Positions 41,074 through 63,781 of a DNA stretch of 64,000 nt are shown piece by piece. Made by a program: the position numbers and the translations under genes. The DNA is from Oikopleura dioica. Its lineage: Eukaryota; Animalia; Chordata. Where the stretch lies: NCBI GenBank assembly GCA_907165135.1, contig OU015567.1:3658001-3722000 (forward strand), in the 5' to 3' direction. The notes under the pieces are model-generated. The model saw only the letters and a program-made list of their open reading frames with translations. It did no database searches and was not told the origin of the DNA. Within the stretch, counting starts at the first letter, position 1. Every line of letters starts with the position of its first letter.

Positions 41074-41309
41074 CAGTAAGCTTGGGTTAGGGATAAGGTT
41101 AGAGTTAAGGTAAGAGTTAGGGTTTGTGTTAGGGTTAGGGTTAGGATTCTTTTTAGCCCATCAGAGTCAATGGTAAGCTTAACTTTTTTCAGCCAATCAG
41201 GGGCCAGAATTCGGCTTAAGTTATTTTCAACCAATCAGAGGCCAGTATTATTTCCATCAACCAATCCCAGGCAAGCTAACCCAAGCCTAACCCTTATCTT
41301 ACCCTACTG
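41074..41309. repeat. Degenerate TTAGGG tract + four CCAAT-box repeats + CCCTAA-like tract
   Basis: gggttagggataaggttagagttaagg...gttagggttagggttagg; (t)tcagccaatcag(a/g)ggccag-like units ~38 bp apart; ctaacccaagcctaaccctt. Confidence 0.7.
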
Positions 41310-46566: not shown

Positions 46567-47421
46567 AAAATTTTAGTTCTTGCGAAAATACATGAATATG
46601 GAAGACAGACCAAAGCGATTCAAAACTGATTGTAAAAAATAAATCAAAAAAGGACTTTCGAATTGAAAAAAATGAACTTTGGACCTCGGTAGAGAAAGAT
46701 GAGTGAATGCAGAAATTTAACCCTGGCTCGTCAGGCGCGCATTTTAACAAAAAACGTTGCGCCATAACGGCTGCATTCTAGTTAGAGAAAATGAAATCTG
46801 CGTTAATTAGGTTGTACCACCGTTATTCTTTTATTTTGGCAAATAAAAGGGAAGATGAAAATTATGATTATACGCTCTTATCGTTTGCAAATTATGAATC
46901 AAAAGCAAAATGCGTTTCATTTGAATAATTATGGAATAATGATTTGAACGAAATCGTTGTTGTCTCATTATTTCCTATTTATGGCCAATCAGTTGAGCTA
47001 TTTTGTTATTTTGCTTGTCACAAAACATCTTTTACCTTCTACTTATTCCCTCAATAACTCATTAAAAGGTTGAATAACGGCAACTTCGAGTGGTTTCACG
47101 TTTTTTGTTTTCACCGAGCGCACTCTTTGTTTTTACTCAAGTCAGTTGAAATTAACTCCACGTTAACGCCTATTGTTACCGTAAATATGAATTAAACGAG
47201 GGAGAGGTTGAGTTCCGGTTCCATCAATCAAAAAATGAAAGCGAAAGTTTTTGAGATATTTTTATTCTATTATTCTCTCAAAAAGTCAGTCAGTCACTAG
47301 AATTAAGTCTATTTACAGTGAGTATAAAAGTGAGAAGAAAGATAAGGAAAAGGTTTTGTTTCGCTTGGTCTGTTCAAAGTGTTGTTCAAAAATCGGTCAT
47401 CCAGTGCACGCGATAGATCAT

Positions 47422-48453
47422 TTATCGTCGTCGTCGGGATTTCTTGGATTTGTCGGGCTTGTCAGCTGGGGCAGCATCGGGTCCGGCAGCGGCGTCGGGA
47501 GCTGGGGGACCTTGTCCGGGAGCGCCAAAAGCTTGGGGAGCTGGGCCAGGGCCGAATCCTCCTGGGCCACCTGGTCCTCCGAATCCAGGACCGCCGGGGC
47601 CGCCGGGGCCACCAAAGCCAGGGCCGCCGGGGCCACCAAAACCAGGGCCGCCTGGACCGCCAAGGCCTGGGCCGCCTGGACCACCGAGACCAGGGCCGCC
47701 GGGACCGCCAAAGTCAGCAGCATCCTCAGCTGGAGGAGGGCCAGCAGGGAAACCGCCAGGGAATCCACCTGGGAAGCCACCGGGGAAACCGCCGAAGTCA
47801 GTAGCATCACCCTGAGGAGGAGGGCCAGCGGGGAAACCACCAGCGGGGAATCCGCCAGGGAATCCACCGAATCCACCGGGACCGCCAAAGTCAGCAGCGT
47901 CTTCAGCTGGGGGAGGTCCTGCTGGGAATCCACCGGGGAATCCACCAGGGAATCCACCTGGGAAACCACCGAAGTCGGCAGCGTCACCTTGTGGGGGAGG
48001 TCCAGCAGGGAAGCCACCAGGGAATCCTCCTGCGGGGAATCCACCAGCAGGGAATCCACCGAAATCAGCGGCATCGGCGGCGGGTGGGGGGCCGAATCCT
48101 GGGAAGCCACCTGGGAATGGGAATGGAGATGGGCCGAATCCCTGAGGAGCTTTGGGAGCTTCTTCAGCGTTGTCGGTCTTGTCGCCTTCCTTTGGAGGAG
48201 CGGGGAAAGCGCCGGGGAAAGCACCAGGGAAAGCACCGGGGAATCCGCCGAAGAATGGCTGAGCAGCGGGAGCAGCGGCTTCAGCGTTATCTGTCTTGTC
48301 GCCTTCTTTGGGTGGCTGGGCGAAGGGGAAGGCTTAAATAAACGATAAAGATTTGCTCTCGAAGGATACTTGCTCACCTGGGAAACCTCCGGGTTGTCCG
48401 GGGAAGCCAAATGGCACTGGGGCTGCTGGTGGTGCTTTAGTCTCTTCTGACAT
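47422..48453 (-). CDS. Gly/Pro/Phe low-complexity protein (~328 aa), two exons, basic C-terminus
   Basis: Exon 48378-48453 (MSEETKAPPAAPVPFGFPGQPGGFP) spliced GT-AG in frame to 47422-48332: (GGFP)n, AGPPP(Q/A)xDAADF, (GGPG[L/F])n, ending DKSKKSRRRR*. Third-position variation fits coding in this frame. Confidence 0.85.
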
Positions 48454-48799
48454 ATCTCAAGTTATGTGGAAATGGATAAATATCATCGAATTATATGTTA
48501 TTTTCATTTCCTGGCTATATTTTTAAAGATGATAAAAATTCTTGATTTAGTGATTCAAAACGGAAACGATTTTGCTTGAAAAAAATAATAGAAAAAGGAA
48601 GCCATTGAGTCTAAATTTTATTATCTGACATAGATAGAACTTTTTAGACATACCGTACTTCCATCATAGAATTTTGATGTCGATTTTTATGGAGAAAAGG
48701 TGGTTGTTCAGAAATGGCTCTTTGAGAAATGTGCATATGCTCCGGCGGTCTACGAAATAAAATTTGTCCATTTCAAGTCTCTTAGATAATAAGTGAAAA

Positions 48800-50074
48800 A
48801 TGAAGCTTTCTTTAGCTTTTGGTGCCGTTTCTGCTTTTGAGCTTGCTGCAGTTACTCCCCCTCCCGGATGCCCGTAAGTTTCAAGACTCTTTATATTTCT
48901 ATTTTGATTCTAGAGACCTTGATAAATACGAGATTTGCACGGCAAAATGCTCAGCCGATCTCGACACTTGCAAAGAAGCTTGCAACCCCGACGACTTCAC
49001 ATGTGCCAGTCGTTGTGATGCCGCTGCTCTCGATTGCAACAACGACTGTCCCTGCAGCAACGGTTGTCCCAGCGGCTGCCTAGGCTGTGAAAACCCTATT
49101 TGCTCGACTGACGGAGAGCACCTTTTGATCCTCAATACATACGCCGGTATGGACAATCAGTCTTTCTTGATCGAACTTGCTACCGACATCCACAAAATGG
49201 GCAACTTCAACTACAACATGGAGATCCACGACATTGAGGACTCCTGTTACGCTTTCATGAAGGGCGAGCACTGGTTCCTCGGTGGTTACTACAACGAGCG
49301 AATGATCGCCAAAGTCAACCTTGGTGGCTGCGCAATCGAGCCTCAACAGAAACTTCTCGCCATCACCCACGTTGACGGCTTCTGGGGATCTTGCTCTGTC
49401 TATAATGACCTAACCCACATGTGTTTTGATGCCAATGGCGTTGGTGGCGATCGATGCCAGACTTTCGACGGTGAAGAGGGAGGTCAAGCTGTTCTTCCAT
49501 CTCGATCAAATGCTCCTCATGACTACACTGCCATGGCCGTCTATGACAACAAAATGTGGGTTGTTGGAGGATGCGATCCTGACGGCTTTGACTGCCATAA
49601 TGTCGTTGAGTCATTTGACGGGTCAAGCTGGACTGTTGCCCCTAACCTACCAGTAGCAGAAATTTATGCTCAGACTGTTCTTGGAGATGTGAATGGGCTC
49701 TACTCTATTTCTGGTCGACCAAGCTCTAATAGCCAGAATGTAAGAATCGAATTCAAAAAAATCGTGAATACTTTTCAAGGTGTACAAATTCAATGGAAGC
49801 TCCTGGAGCCTTCTCGGTCTGATGTCTTCCGCTCAAGCAGACGCATTCTACTTTACTTCTGGCAAAATTGTCAGCAATGGACTCGCATATGGCGGAGAAG
49901 AGTAAATAAGGTTACGATTTTCCGGTAATTTATTTTTCTTTAAGCTACATGGAAAAGATTCAATTGAGCGACACTGAATTTTCCTCCGTCAACATTGGAG
50001 TTGCAGCAAACGGTGAAGTGTTCGATCTCTACTACGCGGCGATGATCTTGGTTGATGGAGCAATCTGTATGTAA
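48800..50074 (+). CDS. Secreted Cys-rich N-domain + Kelch-like beta-propeller protein, copy 1
   Basis: MKLSLAFGAVSAFELAA signal; CTAKC..C...C...C..RC...C...CPCSNGCPSGC; Kelch-like HWFLGG and AMAVYDNKMWVVGG...VESFDGSSWTVAPNLP; last exon ends GAICM*. Confidence 0.85.
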
Positions 50075-50324
50075 AACATCTTCTCTCTTGACAATTCTTA
50101 TGCAGCATAAATTTTGCTTAACTTTTACTAAATAAATAAGATATTCATCAATGTATTTGTAAATAATGTGTCATGCGTTTGTTATTTTGTCGACAATAAT
50201 CGTTCAAAATTGGTCTTTGGGAAAAAGCAGATGGCAAGCCCGTCTCAAGACATAAACCGTCAATCATAAGTTTGTTAGACAATTAGACAATAAATTATCG
50301 TTGATAATGATAATTTTTGAAGCA

Positions 50325-51582
50325 ATGAGCGCCGTTTCCGCTTTTGAGCTTGCTGCAGTCACTCCTCCTCCTGGATGCCCGTAAGTAAAAATGGCGGATA
50401 AAGATAAAATAGTAAATTGAATAAGTGACCTTGACAAATTTGAAATTTGTACGGCGAAATGTTCAGCTGATCATGATGCTTGCAAAGCTGGCTGCAGCTC
50501 GGACGATTTCACATGCGTTAGCCGGTGCGATGCTGCTGCTCTTGATTGCAGCAACGCTTGTCCTTGTAACAATGGTTGCCCAAGTGGATGCCTTGGCTGC
50601 GAGAATCCGGTTTGCTCTAGCGAAGAAGAGCATCTCATGATTCTCAACGCTTATTCTGCAATAAGGGATCAGGCGTTTTTGATCGAGCTTGCTTCCGATA
50701 CTCACAAGATTGCCAACTTCAACTACAACGACTTTTTATTTGAAATTGAGGACTCCTGCTATGCATTCATGAATGGCGAGCACTGGTTCCTCGGCGGTTA
50801 CTACAATGAACGACTGGTCGCCAAGGTCAACCTCGGTGGCTGCTCAATCGAGCCTCAGCAAAGTCTTCTCGCCATCACTCATGTCGACGGCTACTATGGA
50901 TCTTGTGCTGTCTACAACGAAATTACACACATGTGTTTCGACTCAAATGGCGTTGGTGCCAATCGTTGCCAAACTTTTGACGGAGAAGACGGTGGTCAAG
51001 CTGTGGTCCAAACTCAATCAAATGCTCCTCACGACTACGCTGCAATGGCCATCTACGACAATAAGATGTGGGTTGTTGGAGGATGCGATCCCGCCGGCTT
51101 CGATTGTCATAATATCGTTGAATCATATGACGGATCGACATGGACCGTCGCTCCGAACATTCCTGTCGAAGAAATTTACTCTCAGACTGTTCTTGGAGAT
51201 GTTTATGGGCTCTACTCAATCTCTGGTCGCTTCAATGGCCGAAATGTAAGATGAAGATTGTAAATAATTCTTCACCATGTCACATGTTTCAGGTCTTCAA
51301 ATTTGATGGAAATTCCTGGTCGCTCCTTGGTTTGATGTCTGAAGCTCAAGCCGGTGCATATTTCTTCACTTCTGGCAAAATTGTTAACAACGGACTTGCA
51401 TATGCTGGAGAAGAGTAAGTATAAAGGATTTGAGTACAAATTTAGTCATTGGTTTTATTTTATATGACTCTATTGTCATCTTTAGCACCATGGAAAAGAT
51501 CCAATTGAGCGACACAAATTTTTCTTCGATCAACATCGATCGATCATCAAAAAAAAACTCTCTCTGCATCCGTGCGGAGTAA
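50325..51582 (+). CDS. Tandem paralogue (copy 2) of the Cys-rich/Kelch-like gene, shortened N-terminus and truncated last exon
   Basis: Colinear with copy 1 exon by exon. Homology stops at 51538, where unrelated sequence replaces the last 25 codons. Confidence 0.8.
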
Positions 51583-51744
51583 GCAGTTTTTGGATTTTTT
51601 GAAGCTAGAGAACTAAGTCACCCCCTCTGCTGGGGGTGAGGAATTATAGAGAATAGAAGTTGAAGATCATCTTTGTAAGTACACCTAGTTGTCGGCTGCT
51701 CTCAATCAGGCGTTAATTGGCAATTAATTTTAGCTCATTAGCTA

Positions 51745-51835
51745 GCCTCAGGGCAAAATTGCGTGCGTGGCGCTGACGCAGCGCATTATCGCAGCCAATC
51801 ACGTCTCTTGAGAGCAGAAGGGAGGTCACGTACCT
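51745..51835 (+). promoter_or_regulatory. Putative internal promoter of the retroelement
   Basis: GC-rich patch with CGCTGACGCA (CRE-like), CAGCCAATCA (CCAAT box) and GTCACGT, upstream of a G-poor leader. Confidence 0.3.
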
Positions 51836-52293
51836 GTCTAGCCGACCGTGTTCGCCTAACATCTTATGATCTTTTGCTTCCACTCGTAATCTCCTCGACT
51901 TAGTCTGATCATCCCTCAGCAATCACTTTTTCATTAGAGTGATTTCTTGGTCTCACTCTTCTCAACTACCACCGTCACCTTTACTTTGTATTATTTTCCC
52001 TTTCAACGTAAACCTTATTAGTTAAAATTTAAAATTCACAATATAGCTTACCCCCGTATCACTCACGCTACCTGCTTGTTACGCTATTCACTTATCACTA
52101 CTCTCGCTTACTTTATTTTCTTAATTCTATTCCTATTACTGTTGGAAGAGCATGTTCTTTTCGCCCATTCGCAGATGTTGTAATGAGTACAGAAGATATG
52201 CTATTTCTTTTCCCAGCTACTTGTAGCTGAAGTGGGTAGGAGACTACCACAAAAGGGCGAGCTGGGTAATTTAAATGCCATCGTGATCCCCTT

Positions 52294-53307
52294 TTGAGCG
52301 AGTATCAGGAGCTGTCTGTTCACAGAAACGTGCTCTACTCTGCTCTGAGACAAATTGGAGCCAGGACTGAGCTGTCTTTTGTTAAGAATGTGATCGTCCC
52401 GCTCTTTGTCAATCCGTGCCATGTCAGCAGAATTGCCGCGCTGTGGGATGGACGGAAAATGCACGTGAGGTTCATCGACAGATGTAAGTCGCTCACCTCC
52501 ATTGTGTTTGCGAACGCATTTTTAAGCACAATTCCGCATGGCAAAGCCAGGAAGACAGACAGCCACAAAACATCATTTAGCAAGTTTGTGGAGAAACTCA
52601 TATGGTGCCTCAGCAGAATTATTTCAGTCAGATCTTGCAAGAGGACTTGCGCAATTCTAGACTGTTCTTTGAAACTGTCCAAAACTGTTAATAAATCCTA
52701 CCCAGAAGGAAACTCTACGTCTGTCTCTCAAGTTCCCCTGGGAGTTGTTATTTGCGTCCCACTTCTTGCTGACCTTAAAAATTTGGTCCTTTCAGAAAGT
52801 GATAAAAGCCATCACGTGATGGCAAGGGTTTTCTCAGTAACTAACTTAGTTCAGGCCTTGGCTCGGATTGTCGTTACGGGAGGAAACTCGGTTGCTGCCG
52901 GCGCAGAATCTCTAGCAGAAGCCATGTTTAATGGATTTGAAATTACCACTCTTGGCTCAGCAAAGCCCGATAAGGTAGGTCATTTACCTCTCGCGGAACT
53001 GATCATGAGTGGTTTTCAGCCCAAAAAGCCCCGCCAAAATCTCAAGCGGCCCAAAACGCTAGCCAAGCTGAAAACTTGGAGAAGTCGATTACGAAAGTCA
53101 TCGATGATCGCGGCAACAAAGGACCGGCTCCGTCAAAGAGTGCGGCAAAGAAACCCGCTGCTAACTCTGCCACATCCAATTCCCAGGATCAAAGGGGAAA
53201 TCGCCCTGCCCGAGGCGGTGGAGCAAAGCGTGGTCGTGGTGGAAAAAGAAGAGGTAGTTGGAATACCAACCCTGATGGTGGTTCGCGAGGAGGGAAGCGA
53301 AATGTAG
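52294..53307 (+). CDS. Retroelement 5' ORF segment a (unknown; probably continues into the -1 frame near 53025)
   Basis: 337-codon open frame with no recognisable motif. The first in-frame ATG is only at ~52459. Confidence 0.4.
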   Translation: MSEYQELSVHRNVLYSALRQIGARTELSFVKNVIVPLFVNPCHVSRIAALWDGRKMHVRFIDRCKSLTSIVFANAFLSTIPHGKARKTDSHKTSFSKFVEKLIWCLSRIISVRSCKRTCAILDCSLKLSKTVNKSYPEGNSTSVSQVPLGVVICVPLLADLKNLVLSESDKSHHVMARVFSVTNLVQALARIVVTGGNSVAAGAESLAEAMFNGFEITTLGSAKPDKVGHLPLAELIMSGFQPKKPRQNLKRPKTLAKLKTWRSRLRKSSMIAATKDRLRQRVRQRNPLLTLPHPIPRIKGEIALPEAVEQSVVVVEKEEVVGIPTLMVVREEGSEM

Positions 53308-53633
53308 GTAGCAAACCTACGTCACGCCCTCCGCCCAATAATGGAAAAACGAAACAAAATCAGAACCCCCTCGACGCCGCCGAAGCCGATGTTCCGGTAG
53401 CTGAAACAGTATCGAAAGACAAGCTTAACAGGCGCAAAGCCACAAGAAATAAGCTGAAGCCTACTCTTCTTAAACCCAAAATGGATGAAATCGAAGAGGA
53501 CGTTAAGTTGAATCTTAACGAAGATGACATCGGGAGAAGCGATGAAGAGAATCTCACTCCTTTTCCGCAAGGTGGAACACCGCTCAAAGCGATGCCGGGT
53601 GACTCTCAAGACCTCTCCCCGAACACAGGTTGA
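52974..53633 (+). CDS. Retroelement 5' ORF segment b: basic RG/RGG-rich disordered region
   Basis: Frame open from 52974: RPARGGGAKRGRGGKRRGSW...GGSRGGKR, followed by an acidic patch. This resembles a nucleic-acid-binding ORF1 region. Confidence 0.6.
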   Translation, partial: GRSFTSRGTDHEWFSAQKAPPKSQAAQNASQAENLEKSITKVIDDRGNKGPAPSKSAAKKPAANSATSNSQDQRGNRPARGGGAKRGRGGKRRGSWNTNPDGGSRGGKRNVGSKPTSRPPPNNGKTKQNQNPLDAAEADVPVAETVSKDKLNRRKATRNKLKPTLLKPKMDEIEEDVKLNLNEDDIGRSDEENLTPFPQGGTPLKAMPGDSQDLSPNTG

Positions 53634-56281
53634 GGAAGGCTCCTGGTGGTGGTAAGTTCTACACCAACGAAAGTGATGCCATCGACAAAGTACCGTACGC
53701 CGACTCTTTCGTCGGCGACGATGCCGCTTCCTCCTACATGTCCCTTGAAACCCCTACGCCAGTGGGAGAAACCAAGCAATTGTTTTCCCAGAAGGACGAA
53801 GGGGTGAACTATATGCTGGAATCAATTAGCGATCTTCTCCAATTTAAACACACCGTCAAGACAATAACCACTGATGAGGTGGCGTTTCATGTGGACAATC
53901 GTTACAAGCGATTCCAGGGACTGGCCCTCAACTTCATCAAAGCTAGCTCGGCTGGAAACGATGAACTCCTAATGGATATCCCTGCAATTTATCCACCGCA
54001 ATGGCGGGAAGAGAAGTATAACGGTCATATTCTCACCAAAGTTAGCCTTTTGGTCTTTTACAACACGCTAAAACGGCTCGCAATTCCAACTGAGAATATC
54101 CAGACCATTATTATCCAACGTACGGATGGCACGATGGTCGAAGATGGCGACACTGATTGGAAAAGAAACTCCGATGCAGTGGTGCGTGGAGTAAGGTTTA
54201 AATTCCTATTGGACTTCATCAAATACATCTTCTTCGCAGTTAAAACGCTGCAGCTTTTTGATCCTGCCAGACTCATGGCAAACACCACTGCTTGGGCAAC
54301 TATCTTCTCCATGCGCGAGTTCGATGGTCAGGGAAAATTTGTGATCAATAATGCTGATGACAAAGGGCTCTACAAGAAGATAAAATATTTCTTCACTCGC
54401 TTCAAATCCTACGTGAATAGCTCTCAAGCGCCAAACTTCACCTTCAAGGAACACTCGATGACCGTAGGTATCTTACCTATGGCGGAGATTTTCTCCTCCG
54501 AGCTGAAGAAAATGAAGTTTGTTAACCCGAATGTTGAAAGCTGCAAAGAAGCACTCGGAGTTGCTTATGATAATCACCATAACCCTCTCTCCGAAGACAA
54601 CCTGGTCAAAAAAGGTCGAGGAAACCTAGGGAAGGCCTATCAGCTCATCCTGGACGCAATTGATAACGAGATCTTTCGCGTGGAAGGAAATGAGCTCTAC
54701 AAGCTTGACGCCCGTCAGCACTTTGATAATAAAATTGAAGAGCAACGAAGCGGCCTGATGCGCGTCACGTTAGGAGACGCCAAAACTCTGGTGGAAGGGC
54801 GAAGCGCCGCCAAAGTACAGAGAAGTAAGATCCGTTTCTTGGGCAGAACCCTGAAAGCCGGAGCTGGTTCCAAATTCATGAACGATGCCCTGTACACCGC
54901 GTCGACAGCAGCTGGAGTGGTGGAGTGCAACCCTGAGTTTAGAAAGGTTGCTAATACTACCGAAGCTTCTGCCTCGAAACTTCAGAAAATGGACGCAGCA
55001 GCCAAGAAGTTGCGAATTGATTTTGGAAATTCTCAAAAAGATATTCGTAAAACCCTTCGGCTAGCGCAGAGAAACCAGGTAGAATCGTCCACCCTGCATT
55101 ATGGAGGTGCTCAGGCACTGAAAAGCATGCAAGAACAAATGGTAGCGATACTCCAGGGGAAAGAAAAGAGCGACATTCTGGAAGAGGCGGCAATCAACGA
55201 CCGCAACGTCAATCAACTAATTGGTGGCGCCAAGTTCATGGCTTTCAATACTAAATTGGAAGACACTACAAATGAACCCTATCTTGTCCTCAAGGATAGA
55301 GTTATCGACCGCCACCAAACTGTTGACCTGATGGGGAAAGAAGCGAATGTTGGTACGATCTTGAAGTCAGTCTTCGAAGGTGTGCCTGAGAAGGAGATAC
55401 CCCAAGGAGAAAAAGACCTCCAACTAGCCATTCATTTGGATTCAGCCGTTAAAAAGTCGGACCAGCAAGCGTCAGATGAAGAAGAAGTCGATATCGACAT
55501 GACGGAACTCGAAGAGCCAGAAAAGGCAAAGCCGGGACCTACCTTCGTATCACCTCCGAGTTCGATCCCCGGAGCCATTAATTCCAACAATGTGTTCGAA
55601 TCTGATGGCCTACCTAGGCCGGTCTTGGATAAGTCGAGCTCAACCCTCAACATGGACGACATGGACGACGATGATCCAGGTTCAAGCTTTTCCATCACGA
55701 GTACGCAATCTCTAGCGTTTGAAATTCCCAATAAGAGTGAATGGGAGGCGCTGGAGTCAATGACCGATATTCCATTGAAGCTAATTGCCTCCACCCCAGC
55801 TAGAAGGCAAGGAATTGTGGTACGCCGACTGGAAACGGCGGGGTCTACAAGCATGAAAGTCATCCCCTTGGACGAATTCGACAAGAGTGAAGTTGCCAGA
55901 TATTCAAGTCCACAAGACTACGTTAAAAAACGTAAGCCGCCGATGTTTGAATCCTGGGACAAGCTCATGCAGCTGGAAAGTTCCGGCGAAAGAAGAGTGG
56001 CCGACATTGAAAATGTCATGATGAAGCTCGCTAAGGTTCCGAAAGGATCCAAACATCAGCAAGCTAGAAAATGGATCTTTGTCTTAGCCGACAACTCCAT
56101 CAAAATCTTCAAGCAGTTTATCCAGCTCTTGAAAGAACCCTCGGGAACTTGGACTAGTCTTGGCTTGGACCAGGACGTGGAGCAGATCGAGGACGGCTTT
56201 AAATTCAAAGAAGGTTCCGCTTGGAAAGCCTTTTATGAAGAAGTGAAATATTTTATACGAGCTTATGAACGACCGCAGTAA
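53630..56281 (+). CDS. Retroelement ORF1-like protein (883 codons), no recognised domain
   Basis: Long intact ORF directly upstream of the APE ORF, with a coiled-coil-like stretch (ASKLQKMDAAAKKLRIDF...) and acidic linkers. Confidence 0.8.
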   Translation: MRKAPGGGKFYTNESDAIDKVPYADSFVGDDAASSYMSLETPTPVGETKQLFSQKDEGVNYMLESISDLLQFKHTVKTITTDEVAFHVDNRYKRFQGLALNFIKASSAGNDELLMDIPAIYPPQWREEKYNGHILTKVSLLVFYNTLKRLAIPTENIQTIIIQRTDGTMVEDGDTDWKRNSDAVVRGVRFKFLLDFIKYIFFAVKTLQLFDPARLMANTTAWATIFSMREFDGQGKFVINNADDKGLYKKIKYFFTRFKSYVNSSQAPNFTFKEHSMTVGILPMAEIFSSELKKMKFVNPNVESCKEALGVAYDNHHNPLSEDNLVKKGRGNLGKAYQLILDAIDNEIFRVEGNELYKLDARQHFDNKIEEQRSGLMRVTLGDAKTLVEGRSAAKVQRSKIRFLGRTLKAGAGSKFMNDALYTASTAAGVVECNPEFRKVANTTEASASKLQKMDAAAKKLRIDFGNSQKDIRKTLRLAQRNQVESSTLHYGGAQALKSMQEQMVAILQGKEKSDILEEAAINDRNVNQLIGGAKFMAFNTKLEDTTNEPYLVLKDRVIDRHQTVDLMGKEANVGTILKSVFEGVPEKEIPQGEKDLQLAIHLDSAVKKSDQQASDEEEVDIDMTELEEPEKAKPGPTFVSPPSSIPGAINSNNVFESDGLPRPVLDKSSSTLNMDDMDDDDPGSSFSITSTQSLAFEIPNKSEWEALESMTDIPLKLIASTPARRQGIVVRRLETAGSTSMKVIPLDEFDKSEVARYSSPQDYVKKRKPPMFESWDKLMQLESSGERRVADIENVMMKLAKVPKGSKHQQARKWIFVLADNSIKIFKQFIQLLKEPSGTWTSLGLDQDVEQIEDGFKFKEGSAWKAFYEEVKYFIRAYERPQ

Positions 56282-58232
56282 AAACTCGCAGATGTTCAAT
56301 GCTGCTACCAACTACACTGTGCTTAACTGGGTTCCTAAACCAAGTGTGAGGGGGCATATTACATTCATCAATGGAATCGACGGCCTGGTGTCTAACAAAG
56401 GGCTGAAGTTCTCTCACATTCCAATGAGAGCGCTGTGTAGGTCCTTTACCTACTTTGTCTGTCGAGGCGATGGTATGAGAGCCACTTTTGGGCAAATCGA
56501 CCATGGCCTGGCGGGCAATCATATTACTGGAACACCCGACAACGTCATCGTTGAGCCGGTAAGCCCTCTTGAAAGAGAGACAAGAGTTGAAATGGTTAAA
56601 AATCTTATAAAGTGTAGATATATGAGAGATAACTGCTCGGAATGGAATATACCAGTTGACGTCATTCTTAAAAAGGCGGAAACTGACATTTACCTTAAAG
56701 ATTTTGTCACCCAGGTCAACTCTTTTCTGCTCAAGGATGTCACATCGATAAATTTTCATCGATGGATGCATTCCCCTGATTGTTTTAAAAATTTCAATCC
56801 TAGGGGAATTCTTAAACCGTCGGTCCATGAAGATGAAATTTCACGCAGCAAAGAAAAAATTACAATCAAATCACTTGTTAGGGAAAAGCGAGAGGCAATA
56901 CTCTTGGCGCGTACAAATGATCTGTTAAAAAAAGCAATCGTCCCCTTCTCACCCTTCATCTCTTACAATATTCTCTCACCAATGGACTTCATTCACGCCT
57001 GCAACCTGCCCCCTGAAGTTACTCAACTAATGGAGGTCACGGACCTATCTTACAGAGGTAAGGCGTTACCTTCGAATGAAGACCCTTGCGAACTTGAGCG
57101 AAAAGTCAATGAGCACAATAATGCGCTTATAACTAAATCCCCAAAACTCAAGATTGTTTTTGCCAACCTGGGCAAAGTGGGTTTGGCAAGAATTCATGAA
57201 CTCACGAATGAGCTCTTTGACATCCCAATCATCGTGCTCAGTGAAATGTATGCCGACCATGATCTCCTGTCAAACCGTAAGCACTGGCCGAACGGTTACA
57301 CCATTTTCCTTCCTGATCCCTCTCCGACGGGCAATTTAGTGTTCGTCTGCCTCATAGTAAGAAATGAGATTAAGCTCATCCAAAGGCACTCATTAGCACA
57401 AAATCTCCTGTGCAAGTTGGACTTTAAAGGCACGAACCTTTGGGTTTGCGGCATATATCACTTCATCGATAACAAATTCGACGGATACGCAACCAAGTTC
57501 AATTTGGACAGGAGCGTCTTTCTGGACAGCTTACAGGCAGTCAATAACATCTGCAAGGATGAGCCACAAATAATTGGGGGTGACTTTAATAACTCAATCT
57601 TAGACCCGAGGAATCCTAAGGAAGAAAGGGAGGCCAACCTTATCCTAAATTCACTTTCAAACCACCTTATCCACTCGGGTATGGTGAGCTTTAGGAAGAC
57701 GGTTGGGGAGAAAAATAGACTGATCGAGTCGGCAATCGATCATGTCTTCAGTAAAAACATTGTTCATCTTACAACAACTAATTTGGATTTAGTCACGAGA
57801 CTCAGGGCCGATGGGCACATTGGCCTCAAATCCACTTTCAATGTTCAAGGGCCGGACGATGTTTACTGGGAAATTAGAAGAGTGCGTCTTAAGCCTGATC
57901 CTGTGACGTTTTATCAAGAATCCATGAAGGTAGATCACTTACTTACCAAAAATAGGATTCTGCACGATAGAGGTCTCCTCCCAGACTTTTGTATCACAAA
58001 TGCAGGTGTGGAAGCACTAAATGAGCTTTCTGAAAGAATGCAGCCATATGTCGAGAAAGTAATTGCGGTTAAACCCGACAATCCGCGCAGATCACCTCTC
58101 GCGTCCGACTATTTAAAACATACTTTCGCGTTACAAGCTGTTTTAGTGCAATTATTGGCTGCTAGTTTCAGAGTTAGGAATAAGAATAGGGTTATCAGGC
58201 GGGTGCGTGAATGTATTAAAAACTACAACTGA
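56265..58232 (+). CDS. Apurinic-endonuclease-like (EEP) domain preceded by ~290 aa of unknown sequence (ORF2 5' half)
   Basis: LKIVFANLG, IIVLSEM, IIGGDFN, SAIDHVF: the four catalytic blocks of LINE APE. Confidence 0.9.
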   Translation: MNDRSKNSQMFNAATNYTVLNWVPKPSVRGHITFINGIDGLVSNKGLKFSHIPMRALCRSFTYFVCRGDGMRATFGQIDHGLAGNHITGTPDNVIVEPVSPLERETRVEMVKNLIKCRYMRDNCSEWNIPVDVILKKAETDIYLKDFVTQVNSFLLKDVTSINFHRWMHSPDCFKNFNPRGILKPSVHEDEISRSKEKITIKSLVREKREAILLARTNDLLKKAIVPFSPFISYNILSPMDFIHACNLPPEVTQLMEVTDLSYRGKALPSNEDPCELERKVNEHNNALITKSPKLKIVFANLGKVGLARIHELTNELFDIPIIVLSEMYADHDLLSNRKHWPNGYTIFLPDPSPTGNLVFVCLIVRNEIKLIQRHSLAQNLLCKLDFKGTNLWVCGIYHFIDNKFDGYATKFNLDRSVFLDSLQAVNNICKDEPQIIGGDFNNSILDPRNPKEEREANLILNSLSNHLIHSGMVSFRKTVGEKNRLIESAIDHVFSKNIVHLTTTNLDLVTRLRADGHIGLKSTFNVQGPDDVYWEIRRVRLKPDPVTFYQESMKVDHLLTKNRILHDRGLLPDFCITNAGVEALNELSERMQPYVEKVIAVKPDNPRRSPLASDYLKHTFALQAVLVQLLAASFRVRNKNRVIRRVRECIKNYN

Positions 58233-60943
58233 TCACAGCCAAAGTCAGGCAACTTGATCGCAAAATGCTTGTAGTTGGAAATGACTGTATATCTACAATT
58301 ATTTCCCAAAATCAAGCCTGGAAAATCGCGCGCAGATGGATGAAAAATGCCTCCCCGGGAACTTTCGAGAAACCGGTTAATCTGATCGCTGACGAACTTC
58401 TAGGCCTCCAGCTATCAACGGTCCCGCCGTCGAGCGACAGGGGTTTTAACGCTCACCCAGTCTTGCCGCCAGAGAAACGTTTTCGGCTAACTAAGGTGAG
58501 CTTTCGCAAAATTAGCCCAAATCCCGCCTTCTTAGACTTCTATAAAAGGAGCAAAGCGAAAACCGCCGACCTTAAGGGAATTTCTAGAGAAATGACGGAA
58601 AAGCTGCCGCTCCAGTCGTTCGTCAACCTCATCCTAGAGCCCTTCCGCGATGGCACCACTAACTGTAAGTTTGTTGATAGTTGGAGGGAAAATAAGGTGG
58701 TACCTATTCCTAAGCCAGACGGTCGCGCCAGACCAATTACTGTTGTGCCTTTTCACCTGGGGCACCAGGAGAAGGCACAATGCGAGCTCTTTGCCGCATT
58801 TGTCGAGCATTATGGGCTTGTACCACGTGAACAATTTGGTTTTCGACGCAGTAGAAGCTGCGGTGGTGCAGCCTTTGCCGCCAAATTCGCCATCGACTCG
58901 CTTTCAGGGGATTTGGACGATGATGGTAAGTCATTGACCTACCCTGCTTGGGCAATGGTCAGTTGTGATGCCAAAAACGCCTTCGGAGTTATTCCACATG
59001 ATAAATTATTACTTGCGTTGAGCGGAATAGTCTCCGAGGCGTTTTTGGCATACATCAAAGAATTCCTCCCCCGGAGTTTTAGAGCGGTTATGAACGGGTT
59101 TGTCAGCGACAAAAAGGTCTTACCCCCTTGGGGCCTTCCACAAGGCTCAAGTTTAAGCCCTGTCTTTTACATCTACTACTGCTCGATCCTCAATAACAAA
59201 ATGATTATAGATCCAATTGATGAGGAGGCGCAGGAAATGGATGCTGAAATCGACTCACAAGTCGCTGAAGAAGGTTGCAAACCTACCTCTCACCAGCTGC
59301 TTGGCCTAGCGCTAAGCTCAGGTGAGCAAAAAGTCAAAATGGGTACAAGGCTGTGCCCGCACGGCATCAGTACTCATGTTGGCTTATCAGTTTCATTCGC
59401 AGATGATTACATTGCTATAGTTGGTGGATTCACGAGAGCCGCCACGTTCCGAGCAATCAAAACCTCCAGCAACAATGTACTCTGCGAACTGCAAAGAAGC
59501 GGAATCCGCACTGCACCCCACAAATCCAGCTTGGTCATGTTCTGTAAGTCAACGTTTTCGGAGCGGGACAATGCCCTAACAGAAAAATACTTTACAGATA
59601 AATCCGGCCAAACAGGAATTTCACTTGGTGGGGTTTTTGTAAAAACTTCAGAGAAGGTTAAGTACTTAGGAATCTGGCTTGAATCAGTCAATGGAACGGT
59701 CTCTTTTGACCTTCACCATAAGACGATTCGAGGCAGATTTCGAAATGTGGTGGAACAAATTAGCATACTTTTCGGTGCAATGCCCCGAGAGCTTCTGGCC
59801 TGCATTGTCAGAGCGCAACTAGGGGGCCTAGCCTTACATGGTGCTGATTATATTAACCCTCCAAAAAAGCACATGATGATTGGAATGCAAAGCCTCTATT
59901 CGAACGCCCTCTGGCAACGTAGGTCAGTGCCCTATTTTCTGGAGAGTAAACGTCTTGAGCTGAAGTGGAAAGATGCCCAATTTTTTCAAAAATTCAAGGA
60001 ATCATTTCATGAGAGATTTCATGGCCATTGCCCTGAACAGGAGTTTATGGCTGTTCGAATTTTTGGACAAATCCCCCTTCACCTTATGTATCTAAAGCAA
60101 GCCACCATGTCCATCTACAAAGCTTTTCGGTACAACACTCCAGAGTTGCCCGCCGAGCTTGTGCGCTCTGCACTAATGGTCTGTAATAGATTTGGTGAAC
60201 CCATTTGTAAACTGCCGGAGTTATTTCTTGCTGAAAGACTGGAACGGACTTTCATCGACCGCTCGAGATTTACGGAAGGTAGAATACCTGGCCGTTTAAC
60301 TCGAAGTGAGCAAGAAGCAATCTTCGCGGCAAAAACCTTTCACCTAAGATTCTCAGCACTAATCGACACTGATGTTGTCGAGATCAAGTTCATCACCCCC
60401 AAGTGTAGTGCCGATGACCATTATAAGATCGATAAAAAGGCCTGGCCGTGGTACCTAGAAGGATTCTTTAATAGCCTACCTACTGACATTAGGAAAGCTT
60501 TTATCACCTTTAGCTTCGGCTCGGAGCTGAAGGCAGCATTAGCAACAGCACACTTCCATAATGAAGACAGCTTTGTTTGTAATGTATGCGTTCGACCAGT
60601 CGGTGTTAAACATGATAACGGACTTAGGATACCCCTCGTATTACACAACCCAGATGAACATGATCGCAACGCTTACGACTTGCTTACCAAAAACCAGAGA
60701 GCAGCAGGGATCCAAGCTCTCATTGCGTGGTTCTTTGCCACAAAGCAAGAGAGATTGCGCATCTCATCTGCTCTGAAGTTTAACAGCTTTTTCCAGTTAA
60801 TGGACAAGATCTCTCTGGTGGAAGGCCTTAACAATATCATTAAAGGGCTACTCTTTGACCCGAAATTTAGAGAAGGGGTTAGGAAGGTAATTTACCTACA
60901 GGACAATGAACTGTTCGGCCCTGTCAACAATAAGGATTACTGA
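58220..60943 (+). CDS. Non-LTR reverse transcriptase (ORF2 3' half; frame open from 58220, ATG 58265)
   Basis: WRENKVVPIPKP, RPITVV, QFGFRRSRSC, CDAKNAFGVIPH, PQGSSLSP, FADD, HKSSLVMF, KYLGIWL. C-terminal HFH..CNVC..H. Confidence 0.95.
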   Translation, partial: KLQLITAKVRQLDRKMLVVGNDCISTIISQNQAWKIARRWMKNASPGTFEKPVNLIADELLGLQLSTVPPSSDRGFNAHPVLPPEKRFRLTKVSFRKISPNPAFLDFYKRSKAKTADLKGISREMTEKLPLQSFVNLILEPFRDGTTNCKFVDSWRENKVVPIPKPDGRARPITVVPFHLGHQEKAQCELFAAFVEHYGLVPREQFGFRRSRSCGGAAFAAKFAIDSLSGDLDDDGKSLTYPAWAMVSCDAKNAFGVIPHDKLLLALSGIVSEAFLAYIKEFLPRSFRAVMNGFVSDKKVLPPWGLPQGSSLSPVFYIYYCSILNNKMIIDPIDEEAQEMDAEIDSQVAEEGCKPTSHQLLGLALSSGEQKVKMGTRLCPHGISTHVGLSVSFADDYIAIVGGFTRAATFRAIKTSSNNVLCELQRSGIRTAPHKSSLVMFCKSTFSERDNALTEKYFTDKSGQTGISLGGVFVKTSEKVKYLGIWLESVNGTVSFDLHHKTIRGRFRNVVEQISILFGAMPRELLACIVRAQLGGLALHGADYINPPKKHMMIGMQSLYSNALWQRRSVPYFLESKRLELKWKDAQFFQKFKESFHERFHGHCPEQEFMAVRIFGQIPLHLMYLKQATMSIYKAFRYNTPELPAELVRSALMVCNRFGEPICKLPELFLAERLERTFIDRSRFTEGRIPGRLTRSEQEAIFAAKTFHLRFSALIDTDVVEIKFITPKCSADDHYKIDKKAWPWYLEGFFNSLPTDIRKAFITFSFGSELKAALATAHFHNEDSFVCNVCVRPVGVKHDNGLRIPLVLHNPDEHDRNAYDLLTKNQRAAGIQALIAWFFATKQERLRISSALKFNSFFQLMDKISLVEGLNNIIKGLLFDPKFREGVRKVIYLQDNELFGPVNNKDY

Positions 60944-60981
60944 ACTAAAACCTCGTTGACTAACTCCCACCTTCCTCGTTC

Positions 60982-62847
60982 TTGTTTAAGGGCCACTCGC
61001 GGATACTTTTGGTGGACTCAGTTGTAATTCAACCTCTTTTAGGCACATATATCGGTGCGCAGAGGCTGATGGCAATGAAACTTCGAATTCCACCTATATT
61101 CGTGGATGAAATCGCTCTCTATTCTCCATCATCGCGAACCATTTCCCTGTGGCCGGTTTTCGTCCTTCGCAGTCCTATCTTCACGGAATTACTCCAAGGA
61201 AAGAATATAATCCCGTCCGGCATGATCGACTCTCCAGAAAGGTCTACTGCATCGATCAGGAGCTTCGCTTCAACAGACCAAAGAGAGCTTCATCTTTACG
61301 CGGGCGCCTTCCCGAACTTCTTCTCCTCGGAGTTCGACGTAGCCGAATGGATTGCAGGCAAACCTTTGCTAGCAGACGTGATCGATGAGGCACCGCTTGA
61401 ACTCGTCGACGAGTGGTACAATATCTGGCGCTCGGGTAAGCTGCTCAAGCTGAAAAATGCCAACAACGGTCGTCCGCTGGGCGATGCTGATGCGACAGCT
61501 CTAATTGCAAGCATGCTTGCGAACCAGAAGGAAGGTCCGGTACCTACCTTCGACCGCCGGCTTGCGAAGATCGCTGGAAGACTTGTCACTGCGACTTATG
61601 ATGCCGACTTTGGTTGCCAACTCATTGACTTTGCCCTCCAATCGAATGATTTCCGCTTTGTCGACAGTCTCGACGCGTTGTGGAGATCAAACGGCATTAG
61701 CTGGAAGACAACTGAAGCTGTACTGAGCCGACCACTCGGCTGGCTCTGCCTCGACTCAATCAACAAAGCCAACCTAATTGAACAGGCAACCTCCCTGGTA
61801 ACGCCGCTGTCTAGTCAAGCCATCGAAGCCCTAATGCGCATTACCTGTCAGCCGACAGTGTACGAGATGATCAAAGCGCGAGACCTCATGGCGTCGTCGC
61901 TCTGGGAGGAAGGCTTATCCGAAATGCATCAATTTCTCGCCAATCCGCAAAACTTCACCGAGGAGTCGCGAATTGAGCGTTTAGCGGCCTTCACAAATTT
62001 CAACGAAGATACCCTCAAAGTAGTCTCAGATGTCTTTGAAGCTAACATCGGGATGTCAGCTGTGGACTTCTTCGATGAAGCCATAGTCTGGGCTACCAGA
62101 AATTTCTGTCAGTGTGGAAAGGTGATCAACTCGCACGAAGCAACTAATGGAGACGACTTGGCTGAAGCAGCCTTCATGGCCAAAATGTGGGCGATGGAGG
62201 TTTTCCAGATCTCGTATGACATCGAAAAGAAGGACAAAGAATTCGACCACAGAGTCTTCCACAGAATCGCCGCTAGACGTGAGTTTAAAAATGCCCACCT
62301 CAGCTGCTTCTCTTACTACATCACTCGTGGCCTGGGACTAGTTGGTTGCTTCGGTTCGATTATGAAGTGGTCGACCGAAATTATAGTTAAACATATGTTT
62401 ATTACCTACTTTACTAAAGCCCAGGCAATTCTCTCTGAAAAACCTTTCGGCAACTTCTCCAAATGGGCAGCAATTGCCACACTCCGTTTCTCAACACCGT
62501 TCTACGGTTCACCATCTTCAACCGGATTAATTTCGCACACGGTTGAGGAATTGGCTGAATTGGGAGAGGGCGAGTTACTTGAATGGCTCACCAGTAATAT
62601 CCAAGGCTTGACCGTTCTGGTTACTAATCGGTCCTCGAACGGTCCAACAGTGCTCAATAACTGCGCTTTCCCAACTAGCCCCACTTTCTCGTCTTTAGTT
62701 ATCTACAATAATGCCAAAAATCTGATTACGAGGTGGATCTTTATATACAAGCTCCAAAGTCCTCCGAGCCTAATGGCCTGGGGAAAGGTCGATTCCCGCG
62801 TTCAGACATGTGAGCTTTTCTCATATCGCCATGAACACCCACGGTAA
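60982..62847 (+). CDS. Orphan ORF3 downstream of RT (first ATG 61069, 592 aa)
   Basis: Intact intronless ORF on the same strand and with similar composition. The frame opens 20 nt after the RT stop. No recognised motif. Confidence 0.8.
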   Translation: MFKGHSRILLVDSVVIQPLLGTYIGAQRLMAMKLRIPPIFVDEIALYSPSSRTISLWPVFVLRSPIFTELLQGKNIIPSGMIDSPERSTASIRSFASTDQRELHLYAGAFPNFFSSEFDVAEWIAGKPLLADVIDEAPLELVDEWYNIWRSGKLLKLKNANNGRPLGDADATALIASMLANQKEGPVPTFDRRLAKIAGRLVTATYDADFGCQLIDFALQSNDFRFVDSLDALWRSNGISWKTTEAVLSRPLGWLCLDSINKANLIEQATSLVTPLSSQAIEALMRITCQPTVYEMIKARDLMASSLWEEGLSEMHQFLANPQNFTEESRIERLAAFTNFNEDTLKVVSDVFEANIGMSAVDFFDEAIVWATRNFCQCGKVINSHEATNGDDLAEAAFMAKMWAMEVFQISYDIEKKDKEFDHRVFHRIAARREFKNAHLSCFSYYITRGLGLVGCFGSIMKWSTEIIVKHMFITYFTKAQAILSEKPFGNFSKWAAIATLRFSTPFYGSPSSTGLISHTVEELAELGEGELLEWLTSNIQGLTVLVTNRSSNGPTVLNNCAFPTSPTFSSLVIYNNAKNLITRWIFIYKLQSPPSLMAWGKVDSRVQTCELFSYRHEHPR

Positions 62848-63046
62848 AATTACCGCCGGTGTTAACACAACCGTTTCAGAGTTCTTCCCGGTACCTTCGG
62901 AGGTCGCTGACCTACTCCGGCACCTTCGTGCAGTCAGTGCTCCGGGGTTTTCCCACTGTTTGAAGAAGAGAGCAATCGAGCGGATTCAATCCCACAGTTG
63001 GAACTCTTGTCTCCGTGAGTTTTGCCGGCTCTTCAGGCTCTGGTAA
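62831..63046 (+). CDS. Small ORF4 (71 aa) overlapping the ORF3 stop
   Basis: The ATG at 62831 sits in a 17-nt overlap that nearly copies the ORF1/ORF2 overlap. MNTHGKITAG...CLREFCRLFRLW*. Confidence 0.45.
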   Translation: MNTHGKITAGVNTTVSEFFPVPSEVADLLRHLRAVSAPGFSHCLKKRAIERIQSHSWNSCLREFCRLFRLW

Positions 63047-63781
63047 TGGCGAAGATATCTTCAATCGTTTTATTTAATCCCAATACTCTACGTCATTAAA
63101 GAATTTTACCATCCTCCCTGAAAACCATCAAATCGCTCTCATCTCCTTTTCCTCTTTTCGGTCAGGGTGACGGAGTACATTGTAATTACCGTAGCCCTTT
63201 ATAAACCCTCGCTCTTGCAGCTGGACCAGGAAATGTAGTCTAAGTTATGCTTTTGTCAACCGTATTTTATCTTAAAAATTGTTTTTTTACACGCCCTTTT
63301 GCGTCCTTCCCAGTTTATTTCATCGTCCGGCCTTAAACCAGCTCCCTGTGTTTTATTTTAGCTTCCAGATTCCATAACTAACTTATTCTTTTTCTAATTT
63401 ATTACCAACTATAAATAGCAATCACCCTAAATCAGGGTTAGGCCCCTTTTGCGATCTCTCCGCTAACCTTAAATTAAAACCAAATACTTCTGCTTCGCCC
63501 CTTTTTGCTGCTCGTTCTATAATTTACTCTTATGCCGCGCTAACTCACTCAAATGCATAAATAAAATTTCTTTGCTCAATTTAAGTAATACTTCAACAAA
63601 ACCGGCAGTCAAGATTTCTGACTGTTGGGACGGGGTTTGCTTTTATTTGCATTTATTGAGTTATACTGGAGATCTTGCAGGTTTGCAAGTAATCGCAGGC
63701 ACAGCTTTTCTTTAGAACAGGAGATTAAACAGCAACTGAACTTCCATAGGAATATAATGGTAGGTCAGTGTCATACCTCAA

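What the first reader, a model, noticed from the sequence alone, without database searches (positions are those of the whole stretch)
60982..62847. Intact ~600-aa orphan ORF downstream of the reverse transcriptase
Seen: the frame opens at 60964, 20 nt after the RT stop; the first ATG is 61069. There are no introns, unlike every host gene here. The protein looks helical, with no signal peptide, C-terminal TM anchor or recognisable catalytic motif. Established: a long sense-strand ORF 3' of RT is exceptional for non-LTR elements. Inference: a captured or novel accessory protein (e.g. anti-silencing, targeting or particle function).
Basis: partly seen in the sequence, partly recalled or inferred. 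Interest (0 to 1): 0.8.

Follow-up and report, generated by a model that had tools for sequence, protein, structure and literature searches.

The report
Conserved extra gene behind LINE reverse transcriptase
The open reading frame is real: it is a conserved, selected, so far uncharacterised extra gene that sits directly behind the reverse transcriptase in a family of jumping genes (LINEs) of the tunicate Oikopleura, an unusual layout for this kind of element, but what the protein does remains unknown.

Summary
The window is Oikopleura dioica (Okinawa) chr2.

It is not a lone orphan. An exhaustive HMMER search of 1.84 billion proteins found only two other clusters. Including unannotated ORFs, there are seven other loci, making four deeply diverged lineages at 21-29% identity. 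In every one the homologue lies 96-137 nt downstream of the stop of an EN-RT polyprotein.

Copies at different insertion sites give dN/dS of 0.10 (32 synonymous against 11 nonsynonymous changes, p=7e-12) and 0.07-0.47. No host paralogue, Pfam, NCBIfam or PDB match exists, and AlphaFold models are unusable (pLDDT about 40).

The conserved core is an acidic N-terminal domain of about 300 aa, predicted helical, with no invariant catalytic-type residues. One lineage keeps only this core.

The spacer carries a branch-point, polypyrimidine and AG motif in three of four lineages and is poor in ATGs. This points to expression from a spliced or SL-trans-spliced 3' mRNA, which is an inference.

In this copy the upstream polyprotein is split into five frames, whereas relatives have one 2876-codon ORF.

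Verdict: a genuine element-encoded accessory gene whose molecular function is open.

The parts
61069..62847 (+). ORFX coding sequence (592 aa plus stop). The open frame starts at 60964. The Met at 61069 aligns with the start Met of the L002 homologue.
61069..62000 (+). Conserved N-terminal core domain (about aa 1-310, pI 4.8), present in all four lineages. The 21 invariant residues are mostly aromatic or hydrophobic, plus R171, R221, three Pro and one Gly. Motif blocks: IIPSG 61207-61221, YAGAFPNFF 61297-61323, TFDRRLAKIAGRL 61546-61584, SRPLG 61726-61740, CQPTVYE 61846-61866.
62101..62307 (+). Middle region with C-x(1,2)-C (62101-62118) and H-x2-C (62293-62307), conserved in the three long lineages and absent from the short one. 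A possible metal site; this is inference only.
60944..61068 (+). 125-nt spacer between the RT stop and the ORFX ATG. It holds CTAAC (60960-60964), a polypyrimidine tract and AG (60989-60990), together a 3' splice or trans-splice acceptor-like motif. There is no ATG in the spacer.
58220..60943 (+). RT open frame (RVT_1, FADD motif, long C-terminal region). It is 34% identical to the Bergen O. dioica elements and 50-54% identical to lineage D over the C-terminal part.
56247..58232 (+). Endonuclease-containing open frame (weak, sub-threshold APE-type Pfam hits). It is continuous with the RT in L002, L003 and L005, but here it is in another frame. The frame change lies within 58220-58232, at or next to an A5 run.
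53603..56281 (+). ORF1-like N-terminal part of the polyprotein (homologous to L003 polyprotein aa 465-1298), in a third frame.
52270..53633 (+). Two overlapping open frames (52270-53307 and 52974-53633, the latter RG/K-rich). They are presumed to be the fast-evolving 5' part of the polyprotein. This is placed by position and length only; no significant similarity was found.
62848..63720 (+). Presumed 3' UTR. The only AATAAA is at 63560. The 3' end is not defined: no poly(A), no TSD, and only weak colinear matches to the lineage D 3' UTR. The neighbouring minus-strand host gene starts at about 63782.

Best explanation
ORFX is the conserved terminal gene of an Oikopleura-specific LINE, most probably the 'Odin' group, whose other product is a giant ORF1-like/endonuclease/RT polyprotein. 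SHOWN: it has kept its position directly 3' of the polyprotein stop in four lineages that have diverged to 21-29% identity. It is a separate cistron in all of them: a different frame, or two in-frame stops, plus a 96-137-nt spacer. It is under purifying selection in copies at different insertion sites. It has no relatives outside these elements. INFERRED, protein: an acidic, predicted-helical, non-enzymatic core of about 300 aa whose invariant residues are aromatic or hydrophobic plus two Arg. This suggests a binding or scaffold subunit of the element's RNP, or an adaptor to a host factor, that the element needs to propagate. The C-terminal half, with a possible Cys/His metal site, is dispensable in one lineage. 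The protein evolves much faster than the polyprotein (28% against 54% identity for the same pair). INFERRED, expression: reinitiation after a 2876-codon ORF across more than 100 nt is improbable, and frameshifting or read-through is excluded by the stops. The spacer carries a branch-point, polypyrimidine and AG acceptor-like motif followed by an ATG-poor stretch. ORFX is therefore most likely translated from a 3'-coterminal processed mRNA made at that acceptor. This could be by SL trans-splicing (the host resolves its operons this way) or by cis-splicing from a 5' leader donor, as the Tor3a env mRNA is made in the same host.
For: Identity and position. Host and gene model. Relatives: P0009 E=2.5e-23, P0010 E=5.9e-15; only 3 clusters in 1.84 billion; unannotated L002 ORF, E=1e-26; two metagenome loci. 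Linkage to the RT in all 8 loci. Selection: (lineage C omega 0.10, p=7e-12; N-domain 0.09 and aa 301-470 0.16; polyprotein 0.075; lineage D 0.07-0.47). Copies lie at different loci. Protein features. Faster evolution than the polyprotein. Acceptor-like motif scoring 12/15 in 3 of 4 lineages, each with a 5-10% chance in a window of equal length. ATG depletion of the spacer, 2 observed against 6.7 expected, P=0.04. GTAAGT 117 nt from the 5' end is conserved in both lineage C copies, and that leader has no ATG. Host precedents: an unpaired acceptor suffices for SL trans-splicing (PMC6883708). Tor env is expressed by splicing or from an internal promoter (PMC4402516).
Against: There is no expression data of any kind. 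The acceptor motif is weak in L002 (score 9/15, 62% chance). GTRAGT counts in the elements equal chance expectation. The ATG depletion of the spacer is marginal and would equally fit post-termination scanning. No fold, domain or motif assigns a biochemical role, and the AlphaFold models are unusable (pLDDT 41 and 39). In the window copy the polyprotein is split into five frames, so this particular copy may not be autonomous. Only lineage C gives a statistically strong dN/dS. The primary descriptions of Odin could not be read, so the clade assignment and the novelty are not verified.
Confidence: 0.62

Rival explanations
1. Same accessory gene, but expressed without splicing. Either ribosomes that terminate on the polyprotein resume scanning and reinitiate at the ORFX ATG (as L1 ORF2 is reached unconventionally), or an internal promoter in the RT 3' region or spacer makes a capped ORFX mRNA (as Penv does in Tor3b/4b).
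For: The spacer is ATG-poor, which also fits scanning from the stop codon. An internal promoter is documented for the third ORF of Tor elements in this host. The acceptor motif is weak in L002.
Against: Reinitiation after very long ORFs across about 100 nt is generally inefficient (established knowledge). Three of four lineages keep a strong acceptor-like motif.
Confidence: 0.3
2. ORFX is a fast-evolving counter-defence or host-interaction factor (for example against small-RNA or other silencing) rather than a structural RNP subunit.
For: It diverges far faster than the polyprotein (28% against 54% identity for window and lineage D). Its C-terminal half is variable and was lost in one lineage. 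It is acidic and therefore unlikely to coat RNA.
Against: Within lineages dN/dS is 0.07-0.47, with no sign of positive selection. There is no similarity to any known suppressor.
Confidence: 0.25
3. In this Okinawan locus the element is dead (frame-broken polyprotein) and the intact ORFX has been, or is being, co-opted as a host gene.
For: There are five frames upstream against one ORF in relatives, while ORFX is whole. The public annotation calls a gene here. Odin is reported as almost absent from this assembly (PMC8008620).
Against: No frame carries internal stops, so the breaks could be recent or could be homopolymer errors of a Nanopore-based assembly (the EN/RT break is at an A5 run). There is no evidence of orthologous conservation. 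The gene model is an obvious chimera.
Confidence: 0.06
4. ORFX is really the C-terminal part of the polyprotein, separated here by mutation or assembly error, or is read through or frameshifted into.
For: The frames are adjacent (20-nt gap), and L002 has both ORFs in the same frame.
Against: The ORFX frame has its own upstream stop after the RT stop, so no overlap exists for a frameshift. L002 has two in-frame stops. L003 and L005, with a fully intact and selected 2876-codon polyprotein, keep ORFX in another frame behind a 46-nt closed gap. All four lineages keep the separation.
Confidence: 0.03
5. Chance or non-functional ORF, or an unrelated host gene that merely neighbours the element.
For: None beyond the lack of known domains.
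Against: 628 open codons; homologues in 7 other loci, always RT-linked; dN/dS well below 1.
Confidence: 0.01

Closest known systems
Odin, the only non-LTR retrotransposon clade reported from Oikopleura dioica (Volff et al. 2004, cited in PMC4122922 and PMC8008620)
   Same: Same host genus. A non-LTR element with an RT (and an endonuclease region). The Bergen relatives (CBY22502.1, CBY13566.1) are the annotated RT proteins of that genome.
   Different: No Odin reference sequence or primary description was available, so membership is inferred. PMC8008620 says LINE/Odin is 'almost absent' from this Okinawan assembly, yet this roughly 11-12-kb copy is there, only 34% identical in RT to the Bergen copies. 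Whether the 3' ORF was ever described is unknown to me.
Tor (Ty3/gypsy) elements of O. dioica with a third, env-like ORF (PMC4402516)
   Same: Same host. An extra ORF 3' of the polymerase gene, expressed from its own mRNA by splicing (donor near the start of gag, acceptor upstream of env) or from an internal promoter.
   Different: Tor elements are LTR elements. Env is a furin-cleaved transmembrane glycoprotein. ORFX has no signal peptide or TM segment, shows no similarity to Env, and sits in a non-LTR element.
Bicistronic LINE-1 (ORF1p chaperone plus ORF2p EN-RT)
   Same: A LINE with a separately translated non-enzymatic partner protein and a short inter-ORF spacer.
   Different: In L1 the partner is upstream, basic, RNA-binding and trimeric through a coiled coil. 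Here the extra ORF is downstream of the RT, is acidic, and has no RRM, CCHC or Transposase_22 signature. The ORF1-like part is fused to EN-RT in relatives.
Additional ORF3s of bdelloid rotifer LTR and Penelope-like (Athena) elements; esterase ORF1 of CR1/L2/RTEX LINEs (PMC5408684)
   Same: [quoted passage not shown]
   Different: Those ORFs have recognisable origins (GDSL esterase, DEDDy exonuclease, paramyxovirus F). In LINEs they occupy the upstream position. ORFX has no recognisable origin and lies downstream.

Membership tests
Non-LTR (LINE) retrotransposon, APE type | LINE-type reverse transcriptase domain | tested here: met
   RVT_1 E=2.3e-10, above the gathering score. FADD motif in the translation. 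Relatives give RVT_1 E=4e-22.
Non-LTR (LINE) retrotransposon, APE type | Apurinic/apyrimidinic-type endonuclease N-terminal to the RT | tested here: inconclusive
   Exo_endo_phos_2 E=0.0012 and Exo_endo_phos E=0.024, both below the Pfam cut-offs. No PDB sequence hit. The region is conserved at 36% with L003 and L005.
Non-LTR (LINE) retrotransposon, APE type | No long terminal repeats | tested here: met
   No direct repeats flank 52-64 kb in the window or in L001.
Non-LTR (LINE) retrotransposon, APE type | Defined 3' end (poly(A) or short repeat) and target-site duplication | tested here: not met
   No TSD of 10 nt or more and no poly(A) in the window copy. Lineage D ends without poly(A). L002 has an A-rich tail. 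The ends of the window copy remain undefined.
Odin clade | RT groups with Odin reference sequences in a phylogeny | not testable with these tools
   No Odin reference is held, and Volff 2004 and Naville 2019 are not in the library. The assignment rests on the host and on Odin being the only non-LTR clade reported.
Retroviral or Tor-type Env (third ORF) | Signal peptide, transmembrane anchor, furin site or fusion peptide | tested here: not met
   The maximum 19-residue Kyte-Doolittle mean is 1.31 in the window protein. There is no conserved hydrophobic segment and the protein is acidic and soluble-like. No Pfam hit.
LINE ORF1p / gag-like nucleic-acid chaperone | Basic RNA-binding protein with an RRM/CTD, CCHC knuckle or Transposase_22 domain | tested here: not met
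   pI is 5.5 (N-domain 4.8). No Pfam family in any of the 6 members. No similarity to the ORF1-like part of the polyprotein (hhalign probability 0.9%).
Host (cellular) gene family | Homologues unlinked to the RT, with introns, in host genomes | tested here: not met
   An exhaustive phmmer search found only 3 clusters, all element-linked. Every locus has the polyprotein C-terminus immediately upstream.
SL-trans-spliced downstream cistron (operon-like) | Unpaired 3' splice acceptor upstream of the ATG, and SL-joined transcripts | tested here: inconclusive
   An acceptor-like motif is present in 3 of 4 lineages. Transcripts could not be examined.

The most novel reading that the evidence does not exclude
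A LINE organised like a small operon or a retrovirus. Its full-length RNA makes the polyprotein through an ATG-free 0.9-kb leader. A second, 3'-coterminal mRNA is made by SL trans-splicing (or by leader-to-acceptor cis-splicing) at a conserved acceptor just behind the RT stop, and this mRNA makes a lineage-specific accessory protein of a new fold or family. That short mRNA would keep the element's 3' end and so could itself be reverse-transcribed. This predicts ORFX-only retrocopies beginning at the acceptor, possibly carrying the SL.
Probability: 0.3. Interest if true: 0.75.

Novelty: new variant of a known kind. Interest (0 to 1): 0.55.

Why it matters
LINEs are normally described as one- or two-ORF elements with the RT gene last. 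A conserved, selected and separately encoded gene behind the RT would add an accessory function to the LINE repertoire, and it belongs to no known protein family. It occurs in the animal with the most compact and TE-purged genome known.

If the gene is expressed through the host's SL trans-splicing or through retrovirus-like splicing, that would be a new way for a non-LTR element to exploit host RNA processing.

Practically, the result flags two chimeric gene models in the public annotation. It gives a name-worthy family to UniProt E4WZA6/CBY22501.1. It also shows that divergent Odin-like copies exist in an assembly reported to lack them.

Tried and rejected
**Searches for relatives**
- The word-index protein search with ORFX and with the 4-sequence profile returned only the window's own gene model. 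It missed P0009 and P0010, which the exhaustive search found, so the word search is blind here.
- IMG/VR scan with the profile found nothing.

**Domain and fold searches**
- Pfam, NCBIfam, PHROGs, PDB sequence and PDB profile searches found nothing above noise.
- AlphaFold2 with a 6-sequence MSA (full length) and an 8-sequence MSA (N-domain) gave pLDDT 41 and 39.
The viral library was not tried for that reason.
- ORFX as a duplicate of the polyprotein N-terminus is rejected: hhalign probability 0.9%.

**Element ends and non-coding features**
- LTRs and terminal repeats: none. TSD: none of 10 nt or more.
- Rfam on 51.5-64 kb found nothing. Tandem repeats: nothing relevant.
- The bacterial promoter/terminator scan is irrelevant for a eukaryote.
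- Alignment of the 5' leaders of the window and lineage C is not convincing. The 5' frames against the L003 N-terminus show no significant similarity.
- A conserved 3'-UTR motif across lineages: only short matches with E above 0.2.
- A programmed -1 frameshift at the EN/RT break: the sequence is not a canonical X_XXY_YYZ heptamer, and relatives are continuous there.

**Literature**
- The primary Odin papers are not held. No paper in the library describes the Odin ORF structure.

**What was deliberately not built**
The public spliced gene model was not rebuilt, and the ORFs were searched separately by reference.

Full report
**1. What the window is**

The word search with the ORF returned one protein, a 927-aa gene model of Oikopleura dioica OKI2018_I69 chr2. 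Its contig (OU015567.1, about 3.70-3.73 Mb) matches the window base for base, with window coordinate = L001 coordinate + 48591. It is not human. No contig was withheld.

**2.

- Stop-to-stop frames on the + strand are 52270-53307, 52974-53633, 53603-56281, 56247-58232, 58220-60943 (RT; RVT_1) and 60964-62847.
- The RT stop is at 60941-60943 and the next frame opens 20 nt later.
- The first ATG is at 61069 and the stop at 62845-62847. That gives 592 aa from the ATG.
- 60982 is only the first TTG of the bacterial-code ORF lister.
- The public gene model P0001 is a chimera. It joins RT residues to ORFX through a 1.5-kb 'intron' (GTAAGT at 59544 to TTTTAG at 61043) and adds a short spliced tail. 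I searched the ORFs separately by reference and built no joined sequence.

**3. The ORF is not a lone orphan, and every relative is RT-linked**

The exhaustive phmmer search of 1.84 billion representatives found only three clusters:
- the window's own model;
- P0009 (611 aa, E=2.5e-23), which is CBY22501.1/E4WZA6, 'uncharacterized protein' of Bergen O. dioica;
- P0010 (306 aa, E=5.9e-15), from a Logan assembly.

The RT ORF found a Bergen relative, P0002 (34% identity, 98% coverage). In its contig an unannotated 631-aa ORF lies 28 nt behind the RT stop and is homologous to ORFX (E=1e-26). P0009 lies 46 nt (frame to frame) behind a single 2876-codon RT ORF. P0010 lies behind the C-terminus of a polyprotein.

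A profile scan of JGI metagenomes added L005 (the same architecture: a 2876-codon ORF and then the homologue) and L006. Cluster members added L007 and L008.

tBLASTN of all parts against all loci shows the polyprotein C-terminus immediately upstream of the ORFX homologue in all eight loci.

The loci form four lineages, 21-29% identical to one another over 265-470 aa:

| Lineage | Loci | Length |
|---|---|---|
| A | window | 592 aa |
| B | L002 | 608 aa |
| C | L003, L005 | 643 aa |
| D | L004, L006, L007, L008 | 306 aa |

**4. Selection**

- L003 and L005 differ in their flanks upstream of a shared 5' end. L006 and L008 differ beyond a shared 3' end. They are therefore copies at different insertion sites.
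- Nei-Gojobori counts for ORFX in lineage C give 32 synonymous against 11 nonsynonymous changes: omega 0.10, one-sided binomial p=7e-12. The value is 0.09 for aa 1-300 and 0.16 for aa 301-470.
- The polyprotein of the same pair gives 0.075.
- Lineage D pairs give 0.07-0.47 with few changes.
- The separate-cistron arrangement is ancestral. The stops and the 96-137-nt spacer are present in all lineages, including the fully intact lineage C. In the window the two frames do not overlap, which excludes a simple frameshift fusion.

**5. The protein**

- No Pfam, NCBIfam, PHROGs or PDB match was found, by sequence or by profile.
- No host paralogue exists.
- It shows no relation to the ORF1-like part of the polyprotein.
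- It is acidic (pI 5.5; N-domain 4.8), with no TM-grade hydrophobic segment and no conserved basic cluster.
- All four lineages share an N-terminal domain of about 300 aa. Its 21 invariant positions are L, S, I, P, Y, F, F, V, W, G, L, P, L, R, Y, A, R, P, L, P, L. There is no invariant D/E/H/K/C set that would suggest catalysis.
- The three long forms also share C-x(1,2)-C and, about 65 residues on, H-x2-C. This is a possible metal site, by inference only.
- AlphaFold2 with the shallow alignments gave all-helical but unusable models (pLDDT 41 and 39). Foldseek against the PDB gave only noise.
- ORFX evolves much faster than the polyprotein. Window against lineage D is 54% identical over the polyprotein C-terminus but 28% over the ORFX N-domain.

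**6. How it may be expressed (inference)**

- The spacer holds a branch-point-like CTAAC, a polypyrimidine tract and an AG in lineage A (AG at 60989-60990), and comparable acceptor-like motifs in lineages C and D. The acceptor score is 12/15 in each. Only 5-10% of equal-length windows of each element hold one as good. In lineage B it is weak.
- There is no ATG between that AG and the ORFX ATG in A, B and C. Over all spacers, 2 ATGs are seen against 6.7 expected (P=0.04).
- Lineage C has a 911-nt 5' leader with 1 ATG against 16 expected (P about 1e-6). It also has a GTAAGT 117 nt from the 5' end in both copies, and that 117-nt leader has no ATG.
- O. dioica resolves operons by SL trans-splicing, for which an unpaired acceptor is enough (PMC6883708). 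Its Tor elements express their third ORF by leader-to-env splicing or from an internal promoter (PMC4402516).
- I therefore favour a processed 3'-coterminal mRNA. Reinitiation or an internal promoter remains a serious rival. No transcript data could be examined.

**7. State of this copy**

- In L003 and L005 the ORF1-like, endonuclease and RT parts form one 2876-codon ORF, and in L002 the endonuclease C-terminus and the RT are fused. In the window the same homologous segments lie in successive frames.
- The EN/RT change is confined to 58220-58232, at or next to an A5 run.
- No frame has internal stops.
- Real mutations, Nanopore homopolymer errors and, less likely, programmed shifts cannot be told apart here. 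I only locate the breaks. No repaired or consensus sequence was made.
- The ends of the copy are not defined: there is no TSD or poly(A), and the only AATAAA is at 63560. An ATG-poor stretch at 51600-52150 may be its 5' UTR.

**8. Comparison and novelty**

- The element is most probably of the Odin group, the only non-LTR clade reported from O. dioica (PMC4122922). That membership could not be tested, and the primary papers are not held.
- PMC8008620 states that LINE/Odin is almost absent from this assembly. This divergent copy shows that at least one Odin-like element is there.
- A conserved, selected cistron downstream of the RT is unusual for LINEs (my knowledge). The nearest analogues are the third ORFs of LTR and Penelope-like elements.
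- I rate it a new variant of a known kind. I could not exclude that the ORF was noted in the 2004 description.

Noticed in passing
window 52270-60943: The polyprotein of this copy is split into five successive reading frames (junction overlaps of 334, 31, 35 and 13 nt), with no internal stops. Relatives have a single 2876-codon ORF. The EN/RT break is at or next to an A5 run (58218-58222), so it may be a Nanopore homopolymer error or a real frameshift.
   Followed up: partly
window 58592-62910 and 48800-56281 (L001 209-7690 and 10001-14319): The public gene models are chimeras. g4892 joins part of the RT to ORFX across a 1.5-kb 'intron'. The 1899-aa model upstream joins host kelch-like genes to the element's ORF1-like region.
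   Followed up: partly
L003 239-1149; L005 121-1029: The 911-nt 5' leader of the lineage C element has 1 ATG against about 16 expected (P about 1e-6). It also has a consensus GTAAGT 117 nt from the 5' end in both copies. This is a strongly scanning-adapted leader.
   Followed up: partly
window 48799-50300, 50306-51560; L001 21590-22924: Three tandem paralogues of a host gene (Cys-rich N-terminus plus a kelch-like region, 74-83% nt identity). The LINE and a minus-strand intron-bearing gene (window 63782-68871) lie between copies 2 and 3.
   Followed up: no
window 41129-41146 (+) and 43240-43251 (-): Short TTAGGG telomere-type runs in inverted orientation, 2.1 kb apart (0.06 expected by chance). 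These may be interstitial telomeric sequence or the ends of some element.
   Followed up: no
window 47250-48410: A GC-rich stretch of 9-, 12- and 24-nt periodic repeats, open on both strands. It reads as Gly/Pro-rich (collagen-like) on one strand. It is probably a low-complexity host gene.
   Followed up: no
L004, L006, L007, L008: Lineage D, known only from metagenome and Logan contigs (39% GC), has an RT C-terminus 50-54% identical to the window's but only a 306-aa ORFX, followed by a 189-nt 3' UTR without poly(A). Its source organism is unknown.
   Followed up: partly
window 53076-53633: An RG/K-rich, strongly basic stretch in the 5' part of the element. L003 has a basic R/K stretch at a similar position. 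It is a candidate nucleic-acid-binding region of the polyprotein.
   Followed up: no
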